A stretch of DNA of 64,000 bases from Piromyces finnis finn (GCA_002104945.1 MCFH01000004.1:62001-126000); one strand, 5' to 3'; positions 15,658 through 59,828 are shown, counted from the stretch's first letter. A program made the numbers and translations. Notes: a model not told the origin generated them from the sequence alone.

Positions 15658-17486
15658 ATGAAATTCAATATTTCAATTGTATTATCAGCTTTTGCTGCAT
15701 ATGCAGAAGCTTATGAGCTTTTAAAAGAATATTCAAATGGTTTTAGAATTGGTGCTGCAACTAACACCTTATTTTACAATAATAATAATTATGTTAATGC
15801 TATGAAAGCATTCAATTATATGGTAGCTGAAAATGCTTGTAAGTTTGTTAGTATTCAAGGTACTAAGGGTAAATTTAATTTCAATGATTGTGATAATCAC
15901 TTGAAGAAGGCCAAAGAACTTGGTATGGACTTTAGAGGACATGCTTTAATATGGCATTCAATGGCTCCAAATTGGCTTCAATATGAAGATTCTCAAACTA
16001 TGAGACAATCTATTATTAATCATATTACCAAGGTTTTACAACACTATGAAGGTAAAATTGATACTTGGGATGTTGTAAATGAAGCTATTGATGACAGTTC
16101 CAATGGTAATGGCTGGAAATACCGTAATTCCTTCCTTTACCAAAAAAATAAGGATTTCATTGATCTTTCTTTTCAAACTGCTCGTAAAGTTTCACCAAAT
16201 ACTAAGCTTTTCTATAATGATTATAATACTGAAGGTATTTGGGGAAAGAGTGAATCTGTCTACCAATTTATTGCAGATTTAAAGAAGCGTAATATTCCAA
16301 TTGATGGTGTAGGCCTTCAATATCATGTTAGTGTTCAAAACCAACCACAACTTAACAAGATTACTGATTTTTCACATTACTGAACTTGATGTCAGTTGTG
16401 AAAGTTCTTGTTATGCTAGTGATGTTAATAATAAACAATCCCAAGTCTTTAGTAATGCTTTAAAGGCATGCCTTAGTAACTCCTGTTGTACTGGATTCCT
16501 TGTATGGGGTATTGGTGATAAGGATAGTTGGTTAGGTGCTGATAAAAAGGGTTTACTTTTCGATAACAATTATCAACCAAAATCTCAGTACACTGCACTT
16601 TTGAGTGTATTAAAGACCACCAAAGCTGCTTCTCTTGGTAATAAAAATAATAACAATTTTAATAGTAACAGTAATATAACTCCTCCAGTAAATAATAATT
16701 ATGAAGAAACCCAAAGTACTACTTTTAAAGCTACAAAGATTTCTGATGGTTGGTATAAAATTAAAAACCCAAAATCTGGTTTATACCTTCAAGTTAGAAA
16801 TAGTAAGGGTGCTGATTCACAAAATGTCGAACTTGGAGATGACGATTCTCAAATGTGGAAAATTAAAAATATTGGTAGTAACTATGTAACTTTAACTAGT
16901 AGTCTTGGTGACTTTATGTTAGATGTTTGTATGGGTGATACTGATGATGGTGTTAATGCCCAAATTTACACTAGTCATGGTGAAGATGCTCAACAATTTG
17001 TTTTCATGGAAACTGATACTAAGAATACTTATGTTATTGGTACTAAGAACTAGAGGATCAAAAGTTCTTGATATAGAAAATTATGGAACTACTGCTGGTA
17101 GTAACATTTATCAATGGGAAAATGAAGGTAAAGCTAATCAACTTTGGACTCTTGAGGCAGTTAAAGGAAGTAGTGATAATAGTAACATTAATACCAATAC
17201 TAATTTTAATTCATCAAATAATGATTCTACTTGTTGGGCATCTAAACTTGGTTATCCATGCTGTAAGAATAGTGGTGTTGTATACCAAGATGAAAGTGGT
17301 AGTTGGGGCGTTGAAAATAATGAATGGTGCGGTATTGCTTCTGATATCAAATGTACTGGTAAATATGGATACCCATGCTGTAAGAAAACATGCATATCTG
17401 TAGCTGTTGATGATGACGGTTATTGGGGTGTTGAAAATAATGACTGGTGTTTATTAGATAAAAGCCTCTGTATCTATTTATTTTAA
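15658..17486 (+). pseudogene. GH10 xylanase + ricin-B/CBM13 + two CBM10 fungal dockerins, disrupted by two frameshifts (about 16370 and 17048)
   Basis: RGHALIWH, WDVVNEA, YNDYN, GVGLQYH in frame 1; HITELDV nucleophile motif in frame 2; QxW repeats; dockerins [14 protein letters not shown] and [14 protein letters not shown] in frame 3. Confidence 0.88.
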
Positions 17487-22003: not shown

Positions 22004-22651
22004 ATGAAAATAATATTTAATATTGTAATTTTTTTGGCAATACTTTTAACATCACTAAGTATGGCCGCATATACCGAAGAAGAGTATATAAAAGTTGCAA
22101 AAGATTATATTAAAGAAAAATATAGCCAAGACATCAACTGTAAATATAGAGTAGTCATAGATAACTCGGTCTTTATCTATATTGACCAACTAGCCTATGA
22201 TACACCAATTAGTACTTTAGATTCAGTCATGCTAATAGACAAGGATACTAAAGAAGTAATTCATGCTAATTTAAGAATAAAAACAGAAATATATGAAAGA
22301 TATGTTGTAGATGGTACCCCATTAACATTAGAAGAAATACCAGAATTTATTAATAAACTTAATTACAATGAAGAATATAAAATTAATGCAAAGGAAATAA
22401 AAGTTATTCAGAAAAAGAATTTTAATAATTATTATGATATAGAAAATGTACCTTTTGTATTAAAGGAAGAAGATAACAAAAATACAATTGAAGTTGAAAA
22501 AATATATGAACCTATCACTAAGAATAATAGGGGAAATGTATATGAATTAGCTTACTATATTAATTATACAGATGAAAAACATAATGCCTATAATATAGTT
22601 TTATTTGCATATACAAAAGAAGTAAAGAAAAATAATAAAGTGAGTTTTTAA
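22004..22651 (+). CDS. Secreted protein of 215 aa, weakly resembling the FTP propeptide of fungalysin (M36) metalloproteases
   Basis: Clear signal peptide; EEEYIKVAKDYIK..YIDQ..IDKDTKEVIHAN pattern; no HExxH. Confidence 0.5.
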   Translation: MKIIFNIVIFLAILLTSLSMAAYTEEEYIKVAKDYIKEKYSQDINCKYRVVIDNSVFIYIDQLAYDTPISTLDSVMLIDKDTKEVIHANLRIKTEIYERYVVDGTPLTLEEIPEFINKLNYNEEYKINAKEIKVIQKKNFNNYYDIENVPFVLKEEDNKNTIEVEKIYEPITKNNRGNVYELAYYINYTDEKHNAYNIVLFAYTKEVKKNNKVSF

Positions 22652-24130: not shown

Positions 24131-26488
24131 ATGAATAAATCTGTATTTAAATATATATCAATATTTAATGGTCTTATGACCGTTGGAATGACTTTAGCTA
24201 ATCCTATTGTAAATATATCTTATGAAAATGTAGAATCAAATAATAATAATAACCCAAATTATAATCAAAATAATTTTTATTATAATTACTATGATTCTAA
24301 TTCCAATAGTTACAATCAAAATGACTCTAATTCATATATTAATTCAAATTATAACACTAATGATAATTTGAATTCTTATGATAATAGTAATAGCTATAAT
24401 AATAATAATAATAATTATGTTGATAATAGTAACACAATTTATAATTCTGATGTTTATAATAATTATATCGAGAATACAAATTTTAATGTAGATTTCATTG
24501 ATAATTCAAATAGCAATTATTACGACACAAATTCTTATAATTTTAATGACTTTTCTCAACAAAATAGTAATTTTTCAGTAAATTCTCAAAATATTAAATA
24601 TCAAAAGGTATATAATAATTATGATACATTTAAAGCTACATGGATTTACCATACAAAATCAAATCTTTGTCTCACATTTTATAAAATTGACTATAAATTA
24701 AGACTTCAACCATGTAATTCAAATAATGTTTATCAAAAGTGGTATATTCCAACTAAAGGTAGTAATTATTGGATTTTAGGTACAACCTTTTCTCCATCTA
24801 CTAACAAAGAAGTTAGAAGTGAGTTTTCCATTGATGCTAATACAATCGAAGATTATTTTGATTATAACACTATATGTTTATTTATAAATAGCAAAGGTTC
24901 TTTTCTATCAAAAACCTGTATTATAGATTATTCCTATTATTCAGGAGTCAAAATGGATCAAATCAGTTTTAGTAGTTCAACAAATTCTATAAAATCTTCC
25001 AATATCAATAGTAATAATTGTATAGATGTTTTATCGGAAGATCTTACAAATTATAATCAACACCTTAAAAATATTAATGTTAGTAAAAATGCTGGGATCA
25101 GTCCTCTTGATTTGACTGTAGACATGATTCGTCTAACAATGACAAAATGTCAAAATAAAGATACTCAAAAATGGTCTTTCTTTACCGACTTTTCAAATTT
25201 GCAAAAATACCAAAAATCTACTTTTAATCCCAAAAACTATAAGGGTATTACTAATTTAAAGTCAGAAGATACCGAAGTCTATATACAACCAAAAGAAACA
25301 AAATTAGTAAAATTTGATATTTATTCTGGTAATAATAAAGTGAATAATTATTCAAATGTTGTCATTACTATTGCTAATAGTAAAATTGCTGAAGCTAAAA
25401 GAGTCAATAATGGAGTTAATATTGTTGGAAAGAGTGTAGGTTCTACTACTTTAACTATTAAAGTTCATAGTAAAAAGTTAGTTTATAATGTTATTGTTAG
25501 TGATGTCAATGATAAATTAGCCTTTTTAGATATTCAAACTTATGATGATTCAATTGGGGATTCTATTGTTATTCATAGTACTAATACTAAAGGCAATCCT
25601 ATTTTTGCTATGATTGATACTGGTAAGGCAAGAGTAATATCCTACGAAAAAGTCATCGGCTACCTCAAAGCCAATAATATCAAACAATTAGAATGGTTAT
25701 TAATTACTCATTTCCATGGTGATCACTATGGAGGTTTAAACCAATTGATTAATAGTGGTGTAACCATTAAAAAAATATATACAAAGCAATATCATGCATT
25801 GGATAGTACCGTTGAATCTTCAAAATATAAGACTGTATCCGAATTTAGAAGTAATAGAATGAAGGATTGGAATGATATGATCAAAATTATCACAAACAAA
25901 AAAATTCCTATTGCTTATGTTAATGCAAATAAAAATAATAGTACTCAATTAGGAAACTATCATTTTACCTTTATGAATGTCGAAGAAGCCTTTGATGGAT
26001 ATGGTGATGTTTGTGCAAAATTCAAGAATTGTAATGAAAATACCAATAGTGTTATTGCTGTTGTTAAAAATAATGGTAGATATTACTATTTAAATGGTGA
26101 TATTGATAGTTTTTCATCTTCTTTTTCAAAGTCTGACGATGAAAAACTAAAGAAAGCCTATAATAATCGTACTGTGGATAAATGGGTTTCTAAGGCAATG
26201 AAGAACTTTAATATTAAAAACTTTGATTTAATGAAGGCTAGTCACCATGGTGTCCTTTATAATAACATTAAAAAAGCTTACACTGTTGGTAAACCAACCT
26301 ATGCTGTTGTCACCTGTCATAAGGAATTCTTACGTGATCGTTTGAGTGTTCTTGAAAGTAGAATAAAATCTGGTAATTCAAACGCAAAAGTATATTACAC
26401 TGGTAATGGTATTGTTACAGTTAATCAAGATAAAAAAGGTAATATTACTGTTCTTCAAGGAAGAGATGAGCACAATGAATATAAATAA
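24131..26488 (+). CDS. Probably secreted protein: N/Y-rich region, ricin-B lectin, Ig-like module, ComEC/Pce-type metallo-beta-lactamase hydrolase
   Basis: QKWYI and QKWSF lectin repeats; IVGKSVGSTTLTI Ig-like; GDSIVI, MIDTG, THFHGDH, NTNSVIAVV, LNGDI, ASHHG MBL motifs; intronless 785 aa. Confidence 0.85.
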   Translation: MNKSVFKYISIFNGLMTVGMTLANPIVNISYENVESNNNNNPNYNQNNFYYNYYDSNSNSYNQNDSNSYINSNYNTNDNLNSYDNSNSYNNNNNNYVDNSNTIYNSDVYNNYIENTNFNVDFIDNSNSNYYDTNSYNFNDFSQQNSNFSVNSQNIKYQKVYNNYDTFKATWIYHTKSNLCLTFYKIDYKLRLQPCNSNNVYQKWYIPTKGSNYWILGTTFSPSTNKEVRSEFSIDANTIEDYFDYNTICLFINSKGSFLSKTCIIDYSYYSGVKMDQISFSSSTNSIKSSNINSNNCIDVLSEDLTNYNQHLKNINVSKNAGISPLDLTVDMIRLTMTKCQNKDTQKWSFFTDFSNLQKYQKSTFNPKNYKGITNLKSEDTEVYIQPKETKLVKFDIYSGNNKVNNYSNVVITIANSKIAEAKRVNNGVNIVGKSVGSTTLTIKVHSKKLVYNVIVSDVNDKLAFLDIQTYDDSIGDSIVIHSTNTKGNPIFAMIDTGKARVISYEKVIGYLKANNIKQLEWLLITHFHGDHYGGLNQLINSGVTIKKIYTKQYHALDSTVESSKYKTVSEFRSNRMKDWNDMIKIITNKKIPIAYVNANKNNSTQLGNYHFTFMNVEEAFDGYGDVCAKFKNCNENTNSVIAVVKNNGRYYYLNGDIDSFSSSFSKSDDEKLKKAYNNRTVDKWVSKAMKNFNIKNFDLMKASHHGVLYNNIKKAYTVGKPTYAVVTCHKEFLRDRLSVLESRIKSGNSNAKVYYTGNGIVTVNQDKKGNITVLQGRDEHNEYK

Positions 26489-27542
26489 GTTTTTGAACTT
26501 TTTTTCTTCTTTTCACTAAATTCATGAAATATATCATTTAATTATGAGTAGAACAAAATAACCATAATAATACGATAAAGTTTTATTATTTTTTTTTTTT
26601 TTTATACATAAATCGTAAAAATGATGGTTGATGAATCCTTATTTCAAATAATTACATAAATAAATAGATCCGATTCCTACAGTTTTTCATTGATCAACTA
26701 TTCATTTTATATCTAACACAATTTAAATTTCTCTTTTTTTATATTTTAAACGAATAATTTTAAAATAAAAGTAATGTTTCCATATAACATTTCATTTTTA
26801 TTATAGAAATTTTACATAGATATCATTACCTATCTTTAATATGTATATATGTATATACATATATGTTAAAAAAAAAATCTTTTTTTTTTTTTTTAATACC
26901 GTAAATTTTTTATTTTTATGATCTATTATCACCCCATTTATGAAAAATATATATTTAATCAGTTATTCATTCAATATAAATAAATGTTTATATCCATTAA
27001 AAGTATAAAAAAAAATGAATAATAAATAAAAATATGTTTATCATATTTATTTTTTTTAATATATTAATATTAAAATAATATATTAAAATAATATATATAC
27101 AAAGTGAACAATCATATCTGATAAAATAAGAGAGGTAGTTAAAAAAATGAAACCTTTTTTATATAAATTTATAATTATTTTTATTTTATTAGTTTTTTTT
27201 TTTTTTTTTTTTTGGTTTGTTTTAATATGTCTATCTTGAAATTTATAATATAAAAAAAAATAAATAAATAAAAACCAAAATAATAAATGATAATATGTAA
27301 TCTATTATTTTGTAATTAATAAATTTATAAGATTTAAACAATAAAAAAATAAATATTATGATATTACTAAATGAAAATGAAATAGATGAAAAAAAGAAGA
27401 ATTATTGTAATTTTATAACATTTTTTATAGTACAATATACAATTTATAATTTACTAAATATATTTATATGAATTTAAATATCTATAAGAATATGAAATTT
27501 ATCTATATATATTAATTTTTTTTGTTTTTGTTGTTCCCTTTT

Positions 27543-28667
27543 TTATTGTCTTTTTCCACGTTTATAAATATCATTATAGTCAAAACGTTCCTGATCATCT
27601 TTATATCCATAAATACCATTAAGGTTAACATTAGCTGCAGATCTAAATATATTTTGTTCCTTAATACCATATTTTTCTTTTAATTCACCAATTAACTGTT
27701 TAACATTTTTTCTTGTGGATGGTAATTTACTGGAAGCAACAGCACAACCACAAGTCATGCATGTAATATTATTATCTTTCATAATACTACGAATATCATC
27801 TTCACGAATATATACCATTGGTCTAATAAGGGTTAAACCTTCAAAGTTTTCTGAATTAACTTTTGGTACCATGGTTTTATAAGAACCAGCATAAAATATA
27901 TTAATAAGAGTAGTTTCAATAACATCATCAAAATGATGACCTAAAGCTAATTTATTACAACCATATTCTTTGGCTTTGCGATAGAGGAAACCTCTTCTCA
28001 TTTTAGCACACATGAAACATGGTTGATTAGGACTCATTTTATTAGCTACTTCAAATACATCAGATACTTCAATTTTTACATCAATACCTAAGGTTTGACA
28101 ATTATCTACTAAAATTTTTTTATTTGATGGTGAAAAACCTGGGTCCATTGAGAGATAAACAATATCGAAATAGAAATCACCATGTTTTTGAACTTCCTCA
28201 AAAAGTTTTGCCATTAATAAACTATCTTTACCTCCTGAAACAGCTACTGCAACTTTATCTCCTGGTTCAACTAATTTAAAATCTTGCAATGCTTTTCTAA
28301 ATTTTTTCCAAAGCTTAGATCGATAACGAGTAATAATATCACGTTCAAAGCTTTCCTTTGGAGAAAGAAGAGGTCTCTTTTTACCACGTTTAGGTATTTC
28401 ATGTACTTTAACTTCACCTACTTCTTCTTCTCCATTCTCTTGTGATTCTTTATTTCCATCTTCTTTACCCTTTCCTTTATCCTTACCACAATTACATTGA
28501 CAACTGCTATCACAATTCTTACTATGGTCAGTATTAGAATTTAATTTATTCTTTTCATTACTCTCATTATTGATTTTATTTATTACATTTTCTAATTTAA
28601 TTTCTTCGAGTTCTTTAGAATTACTTTCTTCTGAAGCAATTAAATTATTTTTTTCCTCTGAACTCAT
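27543..28667 (-). CDS. ttcA: Bacterial-type tRNA 2-thiocytidine biosynthesis protein TtcA with acidic N-terminal extension
   Basis: PP-loop SGGKDS, PCFMCAKMRRG, LALGHHFDD, IRPMVY, CMTCGC; intronless. Confidence 0.85.
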   Translation of the reverse strand: MSSEEKNNLIASEESNSKELEEIKLENVINKINNESNEKNKLNSNTDHSKNCDSSCQCNCGKDKGKGKEDGNKESQENGEEEVGEVKVHEIPKRGKKRPLLSPKESFERDIITRYRSKLWKKFRKALQDFKLVEPGDKVAVAVSGGKDSLLMAKLFEEVQKHGDFYFDIVYLSMDPGFSPSNKKILVDNCQTLGIDVKIEVSDVFEVANKMSPNQPCFMCAKMRRGFLYRKAKEYGCNKLALGHHFDDVIETTLINIFYAGSYKTMVPKVNSENFEGLTLIRPMVYIREDDIRSIMKDNNITCMTCGCAVASSKLPSTRKNVKQLIGELKEKYGIKEQNIFRSAANVNLNGIYGYKDDQERFDYNDIYKRGKRQ

Positions 28668-28801
28668 CTTATATTTACTATTAATATTAATGATCCTTTT
28701 TTTTTATTTTTTTATTTTTAATTGTTTAAAATAAAATAAGATTAAATTTTATTATATAGATATTTATTGGATAAAAATTATAAAATTCAAGTTAAAATAT
28801 A

Positions 28802-28809
28802 TCACGTGA
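28802..28809. promoter_or_regulatory. TCACGTGA E-box palindrome (candidate bHLH/Cbf1-type site) upstream of ttcA
   Basis: GC-rich palindrome about 135 bp upstream of the ATG in very AT-rich DNA. Confidence 0.35.
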
Positions 28810-29976
28810 GTATTATTTTTTACTTTTAAAAAAGCAATGAAATGAAAAAAAAAGCTTAAAAATGTTTCTTTTATTTTTTTATATATTATTAATAACAATA
28901 TTCAAATATTATAAATATTGCACTTTATGTAATAATAATGATTTTAATAAAATTCATCAATACTTTAATTTTATAGATATTTTTTTTTATTCATCAACAT
29001 CTCCTTAATTGATATATTTTATGTAAAATCACTCCACAATTTTCTCTTTTTCCATAATATTTTGATTATTTTAAATAAAAAAGTAAAATGAATGGTTGAA
29101 AATAACAACAATCTTGTTTACTTTTACTTATTTTTCAATATGCTTTAATTACTGTTTATATTATAGTTTCTAACTATAATTGAAACATATATTAATGTAC
29201 AACATTTCATTAGATAATCCTTCTTATTAACTTATCCCTGGATTATTTGTATGAAACCTTTAAGATTTACTTAATTAGAATATGGAATAATAAAATATTT
29301 TTTATTCTTTGTCTTTTTTTTTCAATAAAATAAGAATCAATAGATATATATGACTATGAAATCATTATTTGTTTTTACTTTCTTTAATATTTTCTATATG
29401 TCAAATGAATATTATTTTTTTTTCTTTATATATTTATATATAATGTTATTTAAAAGTATTTTATTATCACTTTAAAACATCATAAGAAATAGAATAAAAA
29501 TAACTATTATTATTTTTCATTCTGCAAATATGAAACTAATAAATATATTTTTTTCATATTAGTATAAAAAATAAAAATATTTATTTCCGTTGTATATTTG
29601 TATATACATAATGTTTAAATTTTTTGTTGTAGAATTTTATTTAATAAAAGACATCCTTTAAAATGTATAAAATAATCATTTTCTGTTTCTTAAAACATAA
29701 TTCTTATATATTTTTATTGTAATTTAGATTTTTATTTTTTTATTATATTATTTAATTATTTTATAGCATTTGTAAATTACATTAAAAATAAAAATCATTA
29801 GCATAATTAGCACTTATTACTAAACATTTAAAATATATTATAAATTCTTTAATATTTATTTAAATTTAACACATTTTTATTTAAATATGATATATTTTTT
29901 TCATAGAAAAAAAAAAAATACATTGTATATTAAAAAGTGGCAATTTAATATAAAATCAATAATTATTTTCTGAAAA

Positions 29977-30930
29977 TTATAAATATCCTTTAGCAATTTC
30001 TTCAACAATCTTTTTGCATGGATCAATAGATTTAATTAATGGTGCTAAATTACAAACTGAATTAACACTTGCATCAAGATTACCCTTAATTACACCATCA
30101 TATAATGAGCCTGTTGGTGGATTGAAATCACCTTTTTGATTAGCAAGAAGACCATCTTTTCCAAATTTATGTGGTGTTGTTCTATATCTTGCTAAACCAT
30201 TCATGACTGTATAAACAATTAAATCATCAGGATGAGTTTTTAAAATATCTTTTTTAGCAACCATGGATGCTGGATTTTCTTCTGATAATATAAATCTAGT
30301 TCCAACAAAAGCACCTTCAGCACCAACAATTGCAGTTGCTTTGGCTAATTTTTCATTTATAATTCCTCCAGCTGCAAGAACTGGAACTTTAACTGCATCG
30401 GAAAGTAAAGCAACGGCTGATAAAGTACCAGTAGAAAGACGTGGCATTGTACCTCCTTCATCACATCCAGTAGCAACTATAATATCTGCACCTGCTTTTT
30501 CTGCTTTTTGTGCTCCTCTTACTGTAGGATTTAATTCACGGGTAATAAGGGTGAAGCCTTCTTCCTTTAATTTAAATATTTCTTCTTCTTCTGTTTGGCC
30601 AACAAAGACAAGTGTCTTTACATTTTCTTCTCTACAAAGTTGAATAATATTCTTATTAAGACCAAAAAAGTCAATAGATGAAGGAAATGCATTAATAGCA
30701 AAAGGCTTATCAGTAAGTTTTCTTATTTCATGAATAGATTTTCTCATTCCTTTTATAGTCTCTTCAGCGGTATTAGCTGGTTTTTTAAAACCACCATTAA
30801 ATCCAAGAACACCAAGACCACCAGCATTTGAAACAGCAGCACATAACTTTGGTGATGTTAACCAAAATAATGGAGCTTGAATAACTGGTTTTTCTATTTT
30901 AAGAATTTGACATACTCTATTCATTGCCAT
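29977..30930 (-). CDS. Nitronate monooxygenase / FabK-family FMN-dependent oxidoreductase, bacterial type
   Basis: PVIQAP, AAVSNAGGLGVL, GADIIVATG, PVLAAGGI, GAEGAFVGTRF; intronless. Confidence 0.9.
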   Translation of the reverse strand: MAMNRVCQILKIEKPVIQAPLFWLTSPKLCAAVSNAGGLGVLGFNGGFKKPANTAEETIKGMRKSIHEIRKLTDKPFAINAFPSSIDFFGLNKNIIQLCREENVKTLVFVGQTEEEEIFKLKEEGFTLITRELNPTVRGAQKAEKAGADIIVATGCDEGGTMPRLSTGTLSAVALLSDAVKVPVLAAGGIINEKLAKATAIVGAEGAFVGTRFILSEENPASMVAKKDILKTHPDDLIVYTVMNGLARYRTTPHKFGKDGLLANQKGDFNPPTGSLYDGVIKGNLDASVNSVCNLAPLIKSIDPCKKIVEEIAKGYL

Positions 30931-34535: not shown

Positions 34536-37500
34536 ATGGATAAAATTAAACAAAAAAGTTTTGATAACGATATTTTTTCAGATATTGAAGATATCTATAA
34601 ACCGACTGATGCAAGTATTCAAAAAGAGTTGGTAAATTCTATTACCAATTTATCAAATCTTTTATCAAATGGGTTAGTATTCATAAATTATAATATTTAT
34701 GAAAATTTAAAACAAGCAAACGGTTTGAATTATGCTATACCAAATAAATGTAAAGTACTTTCAGAAGTAATAAATAATAATTCTAAAAAAAATACATTAA
34801 AGCAATTTAAAAGACAACATTCAGATCCTAATAAGTCCAAAAATAATGATTCTATTAATATTATAATCACAAATGTTGACAAAGAGGAACCAATAGATGA
34901 ATATTTTAGCATGGAACAAAGTATGATTAAACCGCATCAAGATTTTAACATCGGGGCAGAATCTAGTATGTTATTTGACCAAAGTGTAATATTCTCAAAT
35001 ATTGATATAGAAGGTGATAATGTTGCAAATCAATCAATGATATTTATGGATTCTAATGGTAGAAATATATTTTCACATGAAAATTCAGACAATCATGGAT
35101 CAATGTTTTTAAATGGTTTAACTGATTTACATATAGGTACTGAAACTGAAGGCAATAATAGTACTTTAGTTAACTTAGTCGATGTTGATAATAATTATCT
35201 TTCATCTTCTGATGTTGAGAGTAATAACTCTACAGCTTGTTGGGATGACAAGGCCTCGGTTTCTCCTATGCCAGGAAAAGCAAATGATTTTGAGGAGTAT
35301 TCAGATGAAAGCGATGATCAACCACTCAAAAATGAATTTAATCAAGCCTTTTCAAAAAAGTATCCAAGTTTGGATACAAATGCAAAACTCGATCTATATA
35401 ATTCTCATTCATTATCTACAGCTATTCAAGTTCATCAATATCAAATTACACCAGAAGAATGGAATAATGAGGATGATGAAATCAATATGGCAAAAGCTAT
35501 CATGAAAAAGCAGGGATACAAAAATGCTTCCCCTCACAAAAAATTATATCCAGTAATTGAAACACCATATCTTAATGAATCCAATTCATCAACTGTAAAT
35601 AATAAAGATACCATTAATTCCTCATTCATTAAAGATGATCTATCAATTACCAAAAATATTGTAAATAAAAATGTTAAAAAATTCAATTCAATGGGCATAG
35701 AAAATAAATATATTCAAAAAATTAATTCTTCTAATATCAATTATCACCATGATTCTACTCCAAAAAGTTCGGATAATAATTTATCTACTTTAGAATTGAA
35801 TCTTATCGCATCACCATCACAATCTGTAGTTTCTAAATCTCCATCTATAGAAAATGTCTCTTCTGTAAATAATTTTGCTTCTCTTCAATTTAAATTTAAT
35901 CAAAATCAAAATAACTCTAACGAGTACCAAAATAATAAAACAAATCACAATTGGTCATACAAAATAAAGCAAGAGTTAAAAAATACATCAATTAATGAAG
36001 AAAATCATCAACAAGTTGCTAAAATAATAGCGATTGATGATACTTTGAATGATAACTCTATTATTATTCCAGAAAAGTTAAATATTAAAGATAGAATTAA
36101 TGATATTGAAGCAAGTATTCTTATCAATAATTCAACAAACGAATTTTCTGATGTTAATCAAGCTATTATTAAACCAATGACTGTTGAAAAGGATGAGCAA
36201 TCTTCATTTTCAACAGAAATACCTAAGCAAAATGAATCTAATGATGTATACATTATAAATGCTACAGTAAATAAGTCTGAAGAAGTTGATGATATAGAAG
36301 ACATTAGTACTGGAACTGTTAAAGATATAGTAGTTGACCTTGAAGAAAATAAAAAGAATATTATTAAAAATGATAATTCTTCATTGCTTTTTGATTCAAT
36401 GAAGAAAGAAACAATAGAACTTGAAAAACAAACATTAGACAAAAACAATAATAGTATTGAAAATAAAGGACAACTTCAAGATTCTATTTTTGAGCATGAA
36501 GAAATAGAACAAATCTTAATAAATAATATCTCATCAGAAGTATTTAATGAAAGAAATGAAGAAGAAACTAATGAAGAACCAATTGAATATTTATCAGATA
36601 ATGAAAAGACTATTGAAGAAAAATCTAAAATTTCAAAATATAAAAATGAAGATACAATTTTAGAAGAAAACGAGCAACTTTCTATTGAAAAAGAAAAAGA
36701 TAAGGATGAAAGTAAATTACATCAACAAAGTAATATAGAAGAAGAACCAATTGAATTTTTAACAGACAATGAAGACGAAAATGAAGAACCAATTGAATTT
36801 TTAATGGACAACGAAGATTCAGATGAAAATGAATTAATAGACTATATTGATAATAATGATGAAAATAATGAAAAGATTGTTGAGCAGTCTTTATTATTTG
36901 AAAATGGAACAAAAGATTTAATCAATGGTGAAATAATTGATGGTAACTTGGAAGATCATATTATTATTGAAGAAGAAGATTCAATTATTGGTAATGCTAT
37001 TGAAGAAGCATTGGAAAATAAAAGTTTTGTTATTCAAGAAAATTCATTTATGGATGAGCCATATGCCAATGATTTATCATTTTCTTTTGATGGACATACA
37101 GCATTCCATGAAGTAATGAAAATCTTCGAAGAAAATACAGTACTAGAAACAATTAAAGAAGAAGAAGATATTATTTTAAATGAAGAAGATCAAATTGAAA
37201 ATGATAATAAAATACTCATTGATCAATTGAAGATTGAAGAAAATATTATAAATGAAAATGATAATAAAGAAGTTAAAATATTAGAACTAATTGAAAATAA
37301 TATTAATGAACCAAATAATATTAAAATGAATGACATGATAATTAACTCATTTATTCATGAAAATCAAGATATTATTCATTCTATATTACCATTAACTAAC
37401 GATGAATTATTACCAGTTAATTCAGAACTTTCTAATGAACAAATAATTAAGTGTGATAAAGAGCAAGATATTCTTAAATCAAAAGAGATTATTCCATCAA

Positions 37501-38213
37501 ATGAAGCAATTAAAGTGGATAAAAAAGAGATAAACAGTCAATCAGTAGATTCATCATCAAAGTCAAATAAAGAAGGAATTGAAAAGGAAGAAAATAAAAA
37601 ACAAACTGAAATTAAACAAAACGAGAATTCAAAAGCAAAATCTGATGAGGTTTCTATTAAAAATAATTCAAACAAAATAATTCAAAGAAAAAAAAAGGTT
37701 TCATCAAAACTAATTAAAAAGTCAATAAAATCTTTGGAAAAAGCAAAGAAGATTTCTTCTAATAATAATCGACCAAAAACTATTAAAAAATCTAATAAAT
37801 CTTTAGTATTACCTACTAGGAACTTAATGCCTACAATTAACAAACAGGTTAATTCACCTATATCAAATAATAATTTTGTTAAAGCATTTACTTCTACTAG
37901 TTTGAAACAAAATATTGTTAATATACGCCCAATAGAAAAGGAAATAACAGTTTCTTTTTCTGACTTTGATAATAGTAATCTTTTAAAATTAATTCCTAAA
38001 TCAAAAACTGTTCCAAAAATCACACCAAAAATAATCACAAAGCCAGTTTCAAAATCAACTCCTAAATCAAATTTAGTATATGAATCAAAAGTAAAACCTT
38101 TGATCATATCTAAATCATCAAATAAAACTTCTACGAAAAAATCTATATCTAAAATAAATAAAAAAGCTGTAATTTCAAAACCAGAAAGAAAAATTTCTAA
38201 ATCAGGTAAATAA
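34536..38213 (+). CDS. Large acidic low-complexity protein with Lys/Ser-rich C-terminus; may splice on from 38205
   Basis: 1225-codon ORF in AT-rich DNA; TCAG|GTAAAT donor-like site just before the stop. Confidence 0.75.
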   Translation: MDKIKQKSFDNDIFSDIEDIYKPTDASIQKELVNSITNLSNLLSNGLVFINYNIYENLKQANGLNYAIPNKCKVLSEVINNNSKKNTLKQFKRQHSDPNKSKNNDSINIIITNVDKEEPIDEYFSMEQSMIKPHQDFNIGAESSMLFDQSVIFSNIDIEGDNVANQSMIFMDSNGRNIFSHENSDNHGSMFLNGLTDLHIGTETEGNNSTLVNLVDVDNNYLSSSDVESNNSTACWDDKASVSPMPGKANDFEEYSDESDDQPLKNEFNQAFSKKYPSLDTNAKLDLYNSHSLSTAIQVHQYQITPEEWNNEDDEINMAKAIMKKQGYKNASPHKKLYPVIETPYLNESNSSTVNNKDTINSSFIKDDLSITKNIVNKNVKKFNSMGIENKYIQKINSSNINYHHDSTPKSSDNNLSTLELNLIASPSQSVVSKSPSIENVSSVNNFASLQFKFNQNQNNSNEYQNNKTNHNWSYKIKQELKNTSINEENHQQVAKIIAIDDTLNDNSIIIPEKLNIKDRINDIEASILINNSTNEFSDVNQAIIKPMTVEKDEQSSFSTEIPKQNESNDVYIINATVNKSEEVDDIEDISTGTVKDIVVDLEENKKNIIKNDNSSLLFDSMKKETIELEKQTLDKNNNSIENKGQLQDSIFEHEEIEQILINNISSEVFNERNEEETNEEPIEYLSDNEKTIEEKSKISKYKNEDTILEENEQLSIEKEKDKDESKLHQQSNIEEEPIEFLTDNEDENEEPIEFLMDNEDSDENELIDYIDNNDENNEKIVEQSLLFENGTKDLINGEIIDGNLEDHIIIEEEDSIIGNAIEEALENKSFVIQENSFMDEPYANDLSFSFDGHTAFHEVMKIFEENTVLETIKEEEDIILNEEDQIENDNKILIDQLKIEENIINENDNKEVKILELIENNINEPNNIKMNDMIINSFIHENQDIIHSILPLTNDELLPVNSELSNEQIIKCDKEQDILKSKEIIPSNEAIKVDKKEINSQSVDSSSKSNKEGIEKEENKKQTEIKQNENSKAKSDEVSIKNNSNKIIQRKKKVSSKLIKKSIKSLEKAKKISSNNNRPKTIKKSNKSLVLPTRNLMPTINKQVNSPISNNNFVKAFTSTSLKQNIVNIRPIEKEITVSFSDFDNSNLLKLIPKSKTVPKITPKIITKPVSKSTPKSNLVYESKVKPLIISKSSNKTSTKKSISKINKKAVISKPERKISKSGK

Positions 38214-59397: not shown

Positions 59398-59480
59398 GCC
59401 GGGATGGCCGAGTTGGTCTAAGGCGGCGCACTCAAGATGCGTTTTCGAAAGAAGCGCGAGTTCGAATCTCGCTTCCGGCA
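59398..59480 (+). tRNA. tRNA-Leu(CAA), intronless, long variable arm
   Basis: Acceptor GCCGGGA/TTCCGGC, D arm, anticodon arm GCGCA-CTCAAGA-TGCGT, T loop TTCGAAT. Confidence 0.95.
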
Positions 59481-59828
59481 CTTGTATTTTAAATAATTTT
59501 GAAATTTTTTTTTTTAAAGCCTTTACTTATAATAATTAATATTAAATTTTTAAAATATAGTACATATTTATTTATTTATTATTATTATTATTCATTTAAA
59601 AGAGTGAATCTACTTTGATATCAAATTTTTATTTTATATAAATTTATTATTAGTTATTTATAAATTTCTTAATAGGTTTTATATGTTATTAGAATATGAA
59701 GCAAGAAAAAAAAAATATATATATATATAAAAATTTAATAAAAAATCGAAAAAAAATATACTTAAGTATATAAAACATATAAAACATTAAAGGAATTACT
59801 ACTGTTATTATTTTAAATTCATTTTTGA

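What the first reader, a model, noticed from the sequence alone, without database searches (positions are those of the whole stretch)
27543..28667. Bacterial TtcA in a fungal chromosome
Seen: intronless PP-loop protein with both Cys motifs and TMVPKVNSENFEGLTLIRP, which I recognise as Firmicutes TtcA-like rather than eukaryotic Ncs6/Ctu1. It has an added acidic N-terminus and basic clusters (PKRGKKRP, KRGKRQ) resembling nuclear localisation signals. Established: TtcA is an oxygen-sensitive Fe-S enzyme making s2C32, a mainly prokaryotic tRNA modification. Inference: an anaerobic fungus may thiolate C32 of its own tRNAs using a domesticated bacterial gene.
Basis: partly seen in the sequence, partly recalled or inferred. 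Interest (0 to 1): 0.72.

Follow-up and report, generated by a model that had tools for sequence, protein, structure and literature searches.

The report
Bacterial tRNA thiolase in gut fungus
An anaerobic gut fungus carries an intact, strongly conserved tRNA-sulfur-adding enzyme gene that its ancestors took from a gut mollicute bacterium; this is a clear case of gene transfer, but the chemical mark it makes on fungal tRNA is still untested.

Summary
Window 27543-28667 (-) is an intronless 374-aa ORF with a PP-loop (SGGKDS), a CxxC motif and a CxxCxC motif. Its best family model is TtcA (205.6 bits, below the 272-bit equivalog cutoff); NcsA and TtuA models score 43-51 bits.

It lies in true fungal DNA. 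The flanks are 14% GC, dockerin (CBM10) genes are nearby, and gene order is shared with Anaeromyces and Neocallimastix.

In a 108-protein tree the fungal proteins form one clade (100/100). That clade is sister (100/98) to 274-aa bacterial proteins whose operon (ttcA-like, mnmE, S66 peptidase) matches Anaeroplasmataceae MAGs. This indicates one old transfer from a gut mollicute.

The core is under strong purifying selection (dN/dS 0.03-0.07). Window C217, C220 and C308 align with the [4Fe-4S] ligands of solved NcsA and TtuA.

The 104-aa N-terminal extension is fungus-only and predicted disordered, with a conserved NLS-like KRGKKRP patch. The C-terminal KRGKRQ came from the donor and was not added.

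Whether the product is s2C32 is unproven: the whole donor branch is uncharacterised and distant from E. coli TtcA (30% identity). I found no paper describing this gene.

The parts
27543..28667 (-). Complete intronless CDS (374 aa plus stop) of a TtcA-family PP-loop / [4Fe-4S] tRNA thiolase of bacterial origin
   Evidence: ORF. PF01171. TtcA model is the best hit. Fungal orthologues at 71-92% identity. dN/dS of the core is 0.025-0.074.
28356..28667 (-). Fungus-specific N-terminal extension (residues 1-104): low-complexity and predicted disordered
   Evidence: Absent from all bacterial relatives and poorly conserved apart from a few islands (MSSE, DKGKGK, VGEVxIH). pLDDT is below 50 for residues 1-96. 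dN/dS is 0.33-0.73.
28371..28394 (-). Conserved basic patch PKRGKKRP (residues 92-99), a candidate nuclear localisation signal or extra RNA-binding patch
   Evidence: A [KR]K[KR]P-L core is kept in all 10 fungal orthologues and is absent from the bacterial proteins. Coordinates. Function is inferred from the pattern only.
27762..28256 (-). PP-loop ATP-pyrophosphatase domain (PF01171, residues 138-302)
   Evidence: High-confidence fold (pLDDT 85-97). Best structural matches are NcsA and TtuA.
28221..28238 (-). PP-loop motif SGGKDS (residues 144-149), the ATP-binding and adenylation site
   Evidence: Invariant. Identical to E. coli TtcA 39-SGGKDS-45 (PMC4081106).
28008..28019 (-). C217-F-M-C220, the first two predicted [4Fe-4S] ligands
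   Evidence: Invariant. Aligns with E. coli C122/C125, NcsA C142/C145 and TtuA C128/C131.
27744..27761 (-). C303-M-T-C306-G-C308. C308 is the predicted third cluster ligand; C306 is a second invariant Cys of unknown role
   Evidence: C306, G307 and C308 are invariant. C308 aligns with NcsA C233 and TtuA C220; those ligands are confirmed in PMC10067955. The register against E. coli C219/C222 is ambiguous.
27546..27563 (-). C-terminal KRGKRQ, inherited from the bacterial donor lineage and not a fungal addition
   Evidence: P0011 ends in KRGRRQ and P0012 in ERGKRQ.

Best explanation
This is a functional nuclear gene of an anaerobic gut fungus. The common ancestor of the sampled Neocallimastigomycota acquired it once from an Anaeroplasmataceae-like gut mollicute. 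It encodes a TtcA-family enzyme. By homology, the PP-loop adenylates a target pyrimidine carbonyl in tRNA. A [4Fe-4S] cluster held by three cysteines (C217, C220, C308) then carries a sulfide on its free iron, and that sulfide displaces AMP to leave a 2-thio base. The most likely product is 2-thiocytidine at position 32 of some cytosolic tRNAs. After transfer the gene gained a disordered N-terminal extension of about 100 aa with a conserved KRGKKRP patch. That patch probably directs the enzyme to the nucleus, where tRNAs mature, or adds RNA affinity. Shown here: bacterial origin, single integration, fungal residence, purifying selection, and retention of all catalytic motifs. Inferred: tRNA as substrate, C32 as the site, sulfide or a persulfide as sulfur source, and the role of the extension.
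For: Identity: PF01171. The TtcA model is the best hit at 205.6 bits, well above TilS 75, TtuA 51 and NcsA 43. Identity to E. coli TtcA is 30% over almost its full length, E=3e-43. The fold matches the [4Fe-4S] thiolases NcsA and TtuA first. The cluster ligands and PP-loop are conserved. Origin: in the careful IQ-TREE analysis the fungal clade has 100/100 support, is sister to P0011-15 at 100/98, and lies inside a 98/95 clade with Anaeroplasmataceae MAG proteins. The sister protein P0012 lies in a compact bacterial operon (ttcA-like, mnmE, S66 peptidase) with the same order as the Anaeroplasmataceae MAG loci. Shared derived features are ECMTCGC and the KRG[KR]RQ C-terminus. Fungal residence: CBM10 dockerin/GH10 genes lie in the window and the flanks are 14% GC. 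Orthologues sit on 341-kb to 3.8-Mb scaffolds, with conserved flanking genes in Anaeromyces and Neocallimastix. GC3 tracks each host genome. Function retained: core dN/dS is 0.025-0.074 between genera. These genera diverged about 66 Mya by PMC6712302. Adjacency to mnmE in the donors fits a tRNA anticodon-loop role. Related enzymes can use inorganic sulfide (PMC10067955), which from general knowledge is abundant in the rumen.
Against: The score is below the curated TtcA equivalog cutoff (205.6 against 272). The same is true of the donors (200 and 191 bits), while E. coli TtcA scores 514. E. coli TtcA sits on a branch of about 8.6 substitutions per site from this family, so site specificity may differ. 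The papers I could search report no s2C for Bacillota or Mollicutes carrying this subfamily; B. subtilis lacks both s2C and TtcA. The alignment of the third Cys motif to E. coli C219/C222 is ambiguous. The only hint is four RNA-guessed runs holding about 65% of the words of a stretch in which the ORF makes up 62%. The NLS reading rests on a pattern only.
Confidence: 0.55

Rival explanations
1. Same origin and same chemistry (PP-loop plus [4Fe-4S] thiolation), but the Bacillota/Mollicutes branch, and hence the fungal enzyme, modifies a different site or substrate than C32. Candidates are another tRNA pyrimidine, an rRNA base or a small molecule.
For: The score is below the TtcA equivalog threshold for both the fungus and its donors. 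Identity to E. coli TtcA is only 30% and that protein sits on a very long branch. The family carries an extra invariant Cys (the C306-G-C308 motif) that E. coli lacks. No s2C report exists for these bacteria in the searched literature. The related PP-loop/[4Fe-4S] enzymes TtuA, NcsA and LarE show how easily specificity shifts within this fold.
Against: The TtcA model beats every other curated model by more than 130 bits and covers profile positions 17-269 of 295. NCBI names several family members 'tRNA 2-thiocytidine biosynthesis TtcA family protein'. The protein lacks the Zn-finger modules of TtuA and NcsA. Its neighbour in the donors, mnmE, is a tRNA anticodon-loop modification gene.
Confidence: 0.33
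2. The gene is bacterial contamination or an assembly artefact and is not part of the fungal genome.
For: It is intronless, its closest non-fungal relatives are 61-68% identical bacterial proteins, and the donor and the fungus have similarly low GC.
Against: It is embedded between fungal genes with 14% GC intergenic DNA. Orthologues occur in independent assemblies of Anaeromyces, Neocallimastix and Orpinomyces on scaffolds up to 3.8 Mb. The flanking genes are conserved. It carries a fungus-only N-terminal extension, its GC3 is host-specific, and the fungal clade has a long stem of its own, 0.41.
Confidence: 0.01
3. It is a vertically inherited eukaryotic Ncs6/Ctu1-type U34 thiolase that merely looks bacterial.
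For: It belongs to the same PP-loop/[4Fe-4S] superfamily, and the best solved-structure hit is NcsA.
Against: The NcsA model scores 43.5 bits against a cutoff of 500, while TtcA scores 205.6. No N- or C-terminal zinc-finger motifs are conserved, whereas NcsA and TtuA have them. The fungal clade nests within mollicute sequences with 98-100% support. No solved TtcA exists, which explains why NcsA and TtuA top the structure lists.
Confidence: 0.01
4. It is a decaying or non-functional relic of a transfer.
For: Expression was not shown directly.
Against: The ORF is intact in every genus sampled. Core dN/dS is 0.025-0.074 while dS is 0.7-1.9. All catalytic residues are invariant. Transcriptome-sized runs hold an ORF-sized share of the locus.
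Confidence: 0.03

Closest known systems
E. coli / Salmonella TtcA (tRNA cytosine(32) 2-sulfurtransferase; Jager 2004; Bouvier 2014, PMC4081106)
   Same: The architecture is a single PP-loop domain with no zinc fingers. It has the SGGKDS motif, a CxxC pair aligned with C122/C125 and a third Cys motif. It aligns over nearly the full length (30% identity, E=3e-43), and TtcA is the best curated family model.
   Different: The score is below the equivalog cutoff (205.6 against 272). The third motif is C-x-x-C-G-C rather than C-x-x-C-G-S. It lacks the E. coli C-terminal tail. It carries a eukaryote-specific N-terminal extension of 104 aa. The substrate site is untested.
Bacillota/Mollicutes 'tRNA 2-thiocytidine biosynthesis TtcA family protein' (e.g. 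Anaeroplasmataceae MAG proteins P0019 and P0025; unnamed P0011-P0015)
   Same: Identity is 61-68% over the whole bacterial protein, with the same motifs. P0011 and P0012 (the two of P0011-P0015 that were aligned) share even ECMTCGC and the KRG[KR]RQ C-terminus. This is the phylogenetic sister and parent group.
   Different: The bacterial proteins are 274 aa with no N-terminal extension. They sit in compact operons next to mnmE. The fungal gene stands alone in AT-rich eukaryotic DNA. No member of this branch has been characterised experimentally, as far as I could find.
Archaeal/eukaryotic NcsA / Ncs6 / Ctu1 and TtuA ([4Fe-4S] U34 and U54 tRNA thiolases; PDB 6scy, 3vrh, 5mkp)
   Same: The catalytic fold and the three-cysteine [4Fe-4S] site are shared. 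Window C217/C220/C308 align with NcsA C142/C145/C233 and TtuA C128/C131/C220.
   Different: Identity is only 17-24%. The zinc-finger modules are absent, and so is any sign of a Ctu2-type or Urm1/TtuB-type partner. Model scores are 43-51 bits against cutoffs of 450-500.
Animal IscS-TtcA fusion protein, with s2C32 reported in Aplysia tRNA-Lys(UUU) (bioRxiv 10.64898/2026.09.27.754811)
   Same: It is a TtcA-like domain working in a eukaryote, and it is proposed to make s2C32 on cytosolic tRNA.
   Different: The animal protein is about 1177 aa, contains introns, is fused to a cysteine-desulfurase domain and has a C-CSFC-CPAC cysteine pattern. The fungal gene is a stand-alone, intronless, recently bacterial gene nested in mollicutes. 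The two were not compared directly here.
Catalogued bacterium-to-Neocallimastigomycota horizontal transfers (Murphy et al. 2019, bioRxiv 10.1101/487215; Wang et al. 2019, PMC6712302; Ciach et al. 2024, PMC11291939)
   Same: It shows the same pattern as those cases: a donor from the gut microbiota, an intronless gene, presence across the phylum, and amelioration to the host's composition.
   Different: From general knowledge, the catalogued cases are mostly metabolic and carbohydrate-active genes. A tRNA-modification enzyme is mentioned neither in the main texts nor in the held supplements. The full Murphy tables were not available.

Membership tests
TtcA family (PP-loop [4Fe-4S] tRNA thiolases, group I of Jager 2004) | PP-loop motif SGGxDS | tested here: met
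   SGGKDS at residues 144-149. It is invariant across fungi, bacteria and E. coli and matches E. coli 39-SGGKDS-45.
TtcA family (PP-loop [4Fe-4S] tRNA thiolases, group I of Jager 2004) | Central CxxC motif (E. coli C122/C125, cluster ligands) | tested here: met
   C217-F-M-C220 aligns with E. coli C122/C125 and with the NcsA and TtuA ligands.
TtcA family (PP-loop [4Fe-4S] tRNA thiolases, group I of Jager 2004) | Third essential cysteine (E. coli C222) completing a three-Cys [4Fe-4S] site | tested here: met
   C306 and C308 are invariant. C308 aligns with NcsA C233 and TtuA C220. The exact register against E. coli C219/C222 is ambiguous.
TtcA family (PP-loop [4Fe-4S] tRNA thiolases, group I of Jager 2004) | No N- or C-terminal zinc-finger modules, which separates it from TtuA and Ncs6 (group II) | tested here: met
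   The only N-terminal Cys cluster (residues 52-61) is not conserved among the fungal orthologues and is absent in bacteria. Pfam finds only PF01171.
TtcA equivalog (NCBIfam NF007972, tRNA 2-thiocytidine(32) synthetase) | Whole-protein score at or above the curated cutoff of 272 bits | tested here: not met
   The window protein scores 205.6 bits. The donors score 200.4 and 190.9, and E. coli TtcA scores 513.8. I therefore file it as TtcA family, not as a proven s2C32 synthetase.
TtcA equivalog (NCBIfam NF007972, tRNA 2-thiocytidine(32) synthetase) | Makes s2C at position 32 of tRNA | not testable with these tools
   This needs nucleoside LC-MS, an in-vitro assay or complementation of an E. coli ttcA mutant.
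Ncs6 / Ctu1 / NcsA (U34 thiolase) | Match to the NcsA model and presence of zinc-finger modules | tested here: not met
   The NcsA model scores 43.5 bits against a cutoff of 500. No zinc fingers are conserved. The tree places the protein inside bacterial mollicute sequences.
Horizontally transferred gene resident in Neocallimastigomycota | A monophyletic fungal clade nested in a bacterial clade, plus integration in fungal chromosomes at an orthologous site | tested here: met
   Tree support is 100/100, 100/98 and 98/95. Fungal neighbours and synteny are shown. Amelioration is shown.
Classical nuclear localisation signal | A basic cluster that is necessary and sufficient for nuclear import | not testable with these tools
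   Only the pattern is established: P-K-R-G-K-K-R-P, with the K-K/R-x-K/R type core conserved in all 10 fungal orthologues. A GFP-fusion experiment is needed.

The most novel reading that the evidence does not exclude
Anaerobic gut fungi install a bacterial-type thionucleoside on their own nuclear-encoded cytosolic tRNAs: s2C32, or another thio-base not otherwise known in fungi. They would do so with a stand-alone mollicute-derived [4Fe-4S] enzyme that has been retargeted by a new NLS-bearing extension. Because the cluster can bind inorganic sulfide, the enzyme could draw sulfur directly from the sulfide-rich gut and bypass the eukaryotic Urm1 relay. This would be a horizontally acquired change to the decoding apparatus of a eukaryote.
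Probability: 0.45. Interest if true: 0.72.

Novelty: new member of a known kind. Interest (0 to 1): 0.5.

Why it matters
Gene transfer from bacteria into anaerobic gut fungi is well documented, but it mostly concerns metabolic and plant-cell-wall enzymes. This case concerns an RNA-modification enzyme. It has been kept under strong constraint since before the radiation of the sampled genera (about 66 million years by one published estimate) and has been fitted with a eukaryotic-style extension. If it really thiolates fungal tRNAs, it would be one of the very few cases of s2C in a eukaryote; the first detection was only claimed in 2026, in Aplysia. It would also show that the translation apparatus itself can be altered by transfer in an oxygen-free, sulfide-rich niche where fragile [4Fe-4S] enzymes are viable. 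In addition, it offers a tractable eukaryotic handle on an uncharacterised Bacillota/Mollicutes branch of the TtcA family.

Tried and rejected
No read-level evidence on transcription, transcript ends or splicing could be obtained. 

2. The short JGI contig L086 was inspected for a poly(A) tail. It looks like AT-rich genomic DNA with A and T runs on both ends, so it says nothing about expression.

3. The genome-contig scan with the single protein found only relatives of 54% identity or less, such as Acholeplasma and Clostridia. It missed the closer Anaeroplasmataceae-type group, which had to come from the word search.

4. Searches of the anaerobic-fungus HGT papers and their held supplements for TtcA, PP-loop, thiocytidine, lysidine and PF01171 found nothing. 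The AEM version of Murphy 2019 is not held, and its preprint supplement is only partly held. Prior listing in those tables therefore cannot be excluded.

5. Contamination, an Ncs6/Ctu1 identity and a pseudogene were each considered and rejected (see the rival explanations).

6. A conserved N-terminal zinc-finger or Cys cluster was considered and rejected: CDSSCQCNCG is not conserved.

7. No Ctu1/Ncs6 sequence was available by reference for a joint tree, so that comparison rests on curated HMM scores and PDB profile alignments.

8. The large representative-protein search was not run. The word search and family scans had settled the family, and no claim here rests on an absence of relatives.

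Full report
THE OBSERVATION. Window 27543..28667 on the minus strand is a single uninterrupted ORF of 374 aa with an ATG start.
- SGGKDS at residues 144-149
- CFMC at 217-220
- CMTCGC at 303-308
- TMVPKVNSENFEGLTLIRP at 265-283
- PKRGKKRP at 92-99
- KRGKRQ at 369-374

Pfam assigns a PP-loop domain (PF01171) to residues 138-302 with E=2e-18.

WHICH FAMILY. Among NCBIfam models the best by far is the TtcA equivalog NF007972, at 205.6 bits over profile positions 17-269 of 295. TilS-N follows at 75, TtuA at 51 and NcsA at 43.5. The curated TtcA cutoff is 272 bits, so the protein belongs to the TtcA family but is not a certified equivalog. E. coli K-12 TtcA, fetched as L089:5014-5949:-, aligns over almost its whole length at 30% identity, E=3e-43, and itself scores 513.8 bits.

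No TtcA structure is solved. The nearest solved sequences are the [4Fe-4S] thiolases NcsA (6scy) and TtuA (3vrh, 5mko). An AlphaFold2 model has a confident core (residues ~100-334, pLDDT mostly 85-97). That core matches NcsA and TtuA first and TilS next.

CATALYTIC RESIDUES. Bouvier et al. (PMC4081106) showed that E. coli TtcA needs the PP-loop and Cys122, Cys125 and Cys222, which hold a [4Fe-4S] cluster; Cys219 is dispensable. Window C217 and C220 align with C122 and C125. The third motif aligns ambiguously with E. coli: BLAST pairs C306 with C219, and MAFFT pairs C308 with C219.

A profile of the family aligned to solved structures is clearer. C217, C220 and C308 fall on NcsA C142, C145 and C233, and on TtuA C128, C131 and C220. 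These are the crystallographic cluster ligands of NcsA (PMC10067955). C306 and C308 are both invariant across fungi and bacteria. The chemistry-defining residues are therefore all present.

IS IT REALLY IN A FUNGAL CHROMOSOME? Yes, on several grounds.
- The window is about 20% GC.
- It carries a GH10 xylanase with ricin-lectin and CBM10 dockerin modules, which from general knowledge are a hallmark of anaerobic gut fungi.
- The DNA flanking the gene is 14% GC.
- Orthologues of 375-391 aa at 71-92% identity occur in Anaeromyces robustus (341-kb scaffold), Neocallimastix (0.6- and 3.8-Mb scaffolds), Orpinomyces and several unnamed sources.
- Gene order is conserved. In Anaeromyces the gene is convergent with a Lactamase_B gene 46% identical to the window's 24131-26488 ORF, and a homologue of the window's 34536-38213 ORF lies upstream. 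In Neocallimastix a 61%-identical homologue of the window's 22004-22651 ORF lies downstream.
- GC3 of the gene follows each host: 0.066 in Anaeromyces, 0.13 in the window and 0.26 in Neocallimastix.

Contamination is excluded. Earlier notes of this scan name the genome Piromyces finnis; I did not check that.

ORIGIN. The word search found about 8000 relatives. After the fungal ones, the closest are 274-aa proteins at 61-68% identity, two of them named Anaeroplasmataceae MAG 'TtcA family protein'. Clostridia and Acholeplasmataceae follow at about 50-56%. GTDB species representatives reach only 54%.

I built a careful IQ-TREE analysis (LG+C20 PMSF) of 108 proteins and 292 columns, rooted on E. 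coli TtcA. The results:
- The ten fungal sequences form a clade with 100/100 support and a stem of 0.41.
- That clade is sister to P0011-P0015 with 100/98 support.
- Both lie inside a 26-member clade (98/95) that contains the Anaeroplasmataceae proteins P0019 and P0025.
- In the quick tree that larger group sits next to an Acholeplasmataceae clade (SH-aLRT 83).

P0012 lies on a compact bacterial contig in the order ttcA-like, mnmE, S66 peptidase. The Anaeroplasmataceae MAG loci have the same order: ttcA-like, mgtC, mnmE, then the S66 peptidase further on. P0011 and P0012, the two members of the sister group included in the alignment, share with the fungi the derived ECMTCGC motif and a KRG[KR]RQ C-terminus. 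Direction and number of events are therefore clear: one transfer from an Anaeroplasmataceae-like mollicute into an ancestor of the sampled fungal genera. By PMC6712302 those genera radiated about 66 (+/-10) Mya. From general knowledge, Anaeroplasma are anaerobic rumen mollicutes, so donor and recipient share a habitat.

IS IT FUNCTIONAL? Between genera the core has dN/dS of 0.025-0.074 at dS 0.7-1.9, and all catalytic residues are invariant.

The only hint comes from four runs in three studies, guessed to be RNA. Each holds 64-67% of the sampled words of window 27200-29000, in which the ORF makes up 62%. That is what an mRNA with short UTRs would give, but it is not proof.

THE FUNGAL ADDITIONS. 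Residues 1-104 are absent from every bacterial relative. They are low-complexity (22 D+E, 19 K+R, 15 N, 12 S), predicted disordered (pLDDT below 50 for 1-96) and fast-evolving (dN/dS 0.33-0.73).

Conserved islands are MSSE at the start, DKGKGK, and VGEVxIH..PKRGKKRPL. The basic core [KR]K[KR]P-L is present in all ten fungal sequences. It fits the classical monopartite NLS pattern, which I am recalling from memory and did not test. It could equally add RNA affinity.

The N-terminus is acidic rather than arginine-rich. From general knowledge, hydrogenosomes have no genome and therefore no tRNAs. A nuclear or cytosolic site of action is thus the sensible inference.

MECHANISM, AND WHAT REMAINS OPEN. 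By homology (PMC4081106, PMC10067955) the enzyme should proceed in three steps:
1. Bind ATP at the PP-loop.
2. Adenylate the C2 carbonyl of a target pyrimidine.
3. Deliver a hydrosulfide bound to the free iron of a three-Cys [4Fe-4S] cluster.

Relatives accept inorganic sulfide in vitro, which would suit a sulfide-rich, oxygen-free gut. The target is most likely C32, because TtcA is the only characterised enzyme with this zinc-finger-free architecture and is by far the best model.

Three facts keep this an inference:
- The whole Bacillota/Mollicutes branch scores below the equivalog cutoff.
- It is separated from E. coli TtcA by a very long branch.
- I found no experimental data for it. Reviews state that B. 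subtilis lacks s2C and TtcA, and that among the mollicutes surveyed in 2014 only M. penetrans had a TtcA homologue.

I put s2C32 at roughly 55%, another thiolation target at roughly 33%, and the remainder on non-function or artefact.

COMPARISON AND NOVELTY. The gene is present in public annotations as 'adenine nucleotide alpha hydrolases-like protein'. I found no paper that discusses it. The main texts and held supplements of the anaerobic-fungus HGT catalogues contain no TtcA, PP-loop or thiocytidine entry, although the full Murphy tables were not available.

A 2026 preprint reports what its authors call the first eukaryotic s2C32, in Aplysia, and attributes it to an animal IscS-TtcA fusion. 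A TtcA-like enzyme in a eukaryote is therefore no longer unprecedented, but the fungal gene is an independent, recent bacterial acquisition with a different architecture. I class it as a new member of a known kind: a well-supported transfer from gut bacteria into gut fungi, unusual in that it hits the tRNA-modification machinery. Interest is moderate. It would rise substantially if s2C or another bacterial-type thionucleoside were found in fungal tRNA.

Noticed in passing
window 29977-30930 (-): An intronless 317-aa nitronate-monooxygenase / FabK-like ORF lies directly upstream of the TtcA-like gene on the same strand. It matches PF03060 at E=7e-47 and the FabK model at 163.8 bits, below the 453 cutoff. 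It is absent from the syntenic loci of Anaeromyces and Neocallimastix. It may be a lineage-specific insertion or a second acquired gene; its origin was not examined.
   Followed up: partly
window 24131-26488 (+): A 785-aa ORF has a weak ricin-lectin hit and a metallo-beta-lactamase domain, and is convergent with the TtcA-like gene. A 46%-identical orthologue sits in the same position in Anaeromyces robustus.
   Followed up: partly
window 15658-17486 (+): Three overlapping ORFs in different frames together encode GH10 xylanase, ricin-type lectin repeats and two CBM10 dockerin modules. This is probably one cellulosomal xylanase gene split by short introns or frameshifts.
   Followed up: no
window 34536-38213 (+): A 1225-aa ORF has no Pfam match. 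Part of it (residues 684-872) is 51% identical to sequence upstream of the Anaeromyces TtcA-like gene, so it is a conserved fungal gene of unknown function.
   Followed up: no
L081:1394-3573, L087:6001-8677, L088:2072-4748: In the bacterial donor lineage the TtcA-family gene is consistently next to mnmE (the tRNA U34 modification GTPase), with mgtC sometimes between them. This conserved neighbourhood may hint at the pathway of this uncharacterised TtcA branch.
   Followed up: partly
window 59398-59481 (+): The only tRNA gene in the window is tRNA-Leu(CAA). Its position-32 base was not examined.
   Followed up: no
They were left alone afterwards, so the 5' leader of the gene was not analysed.
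   Followed up: no
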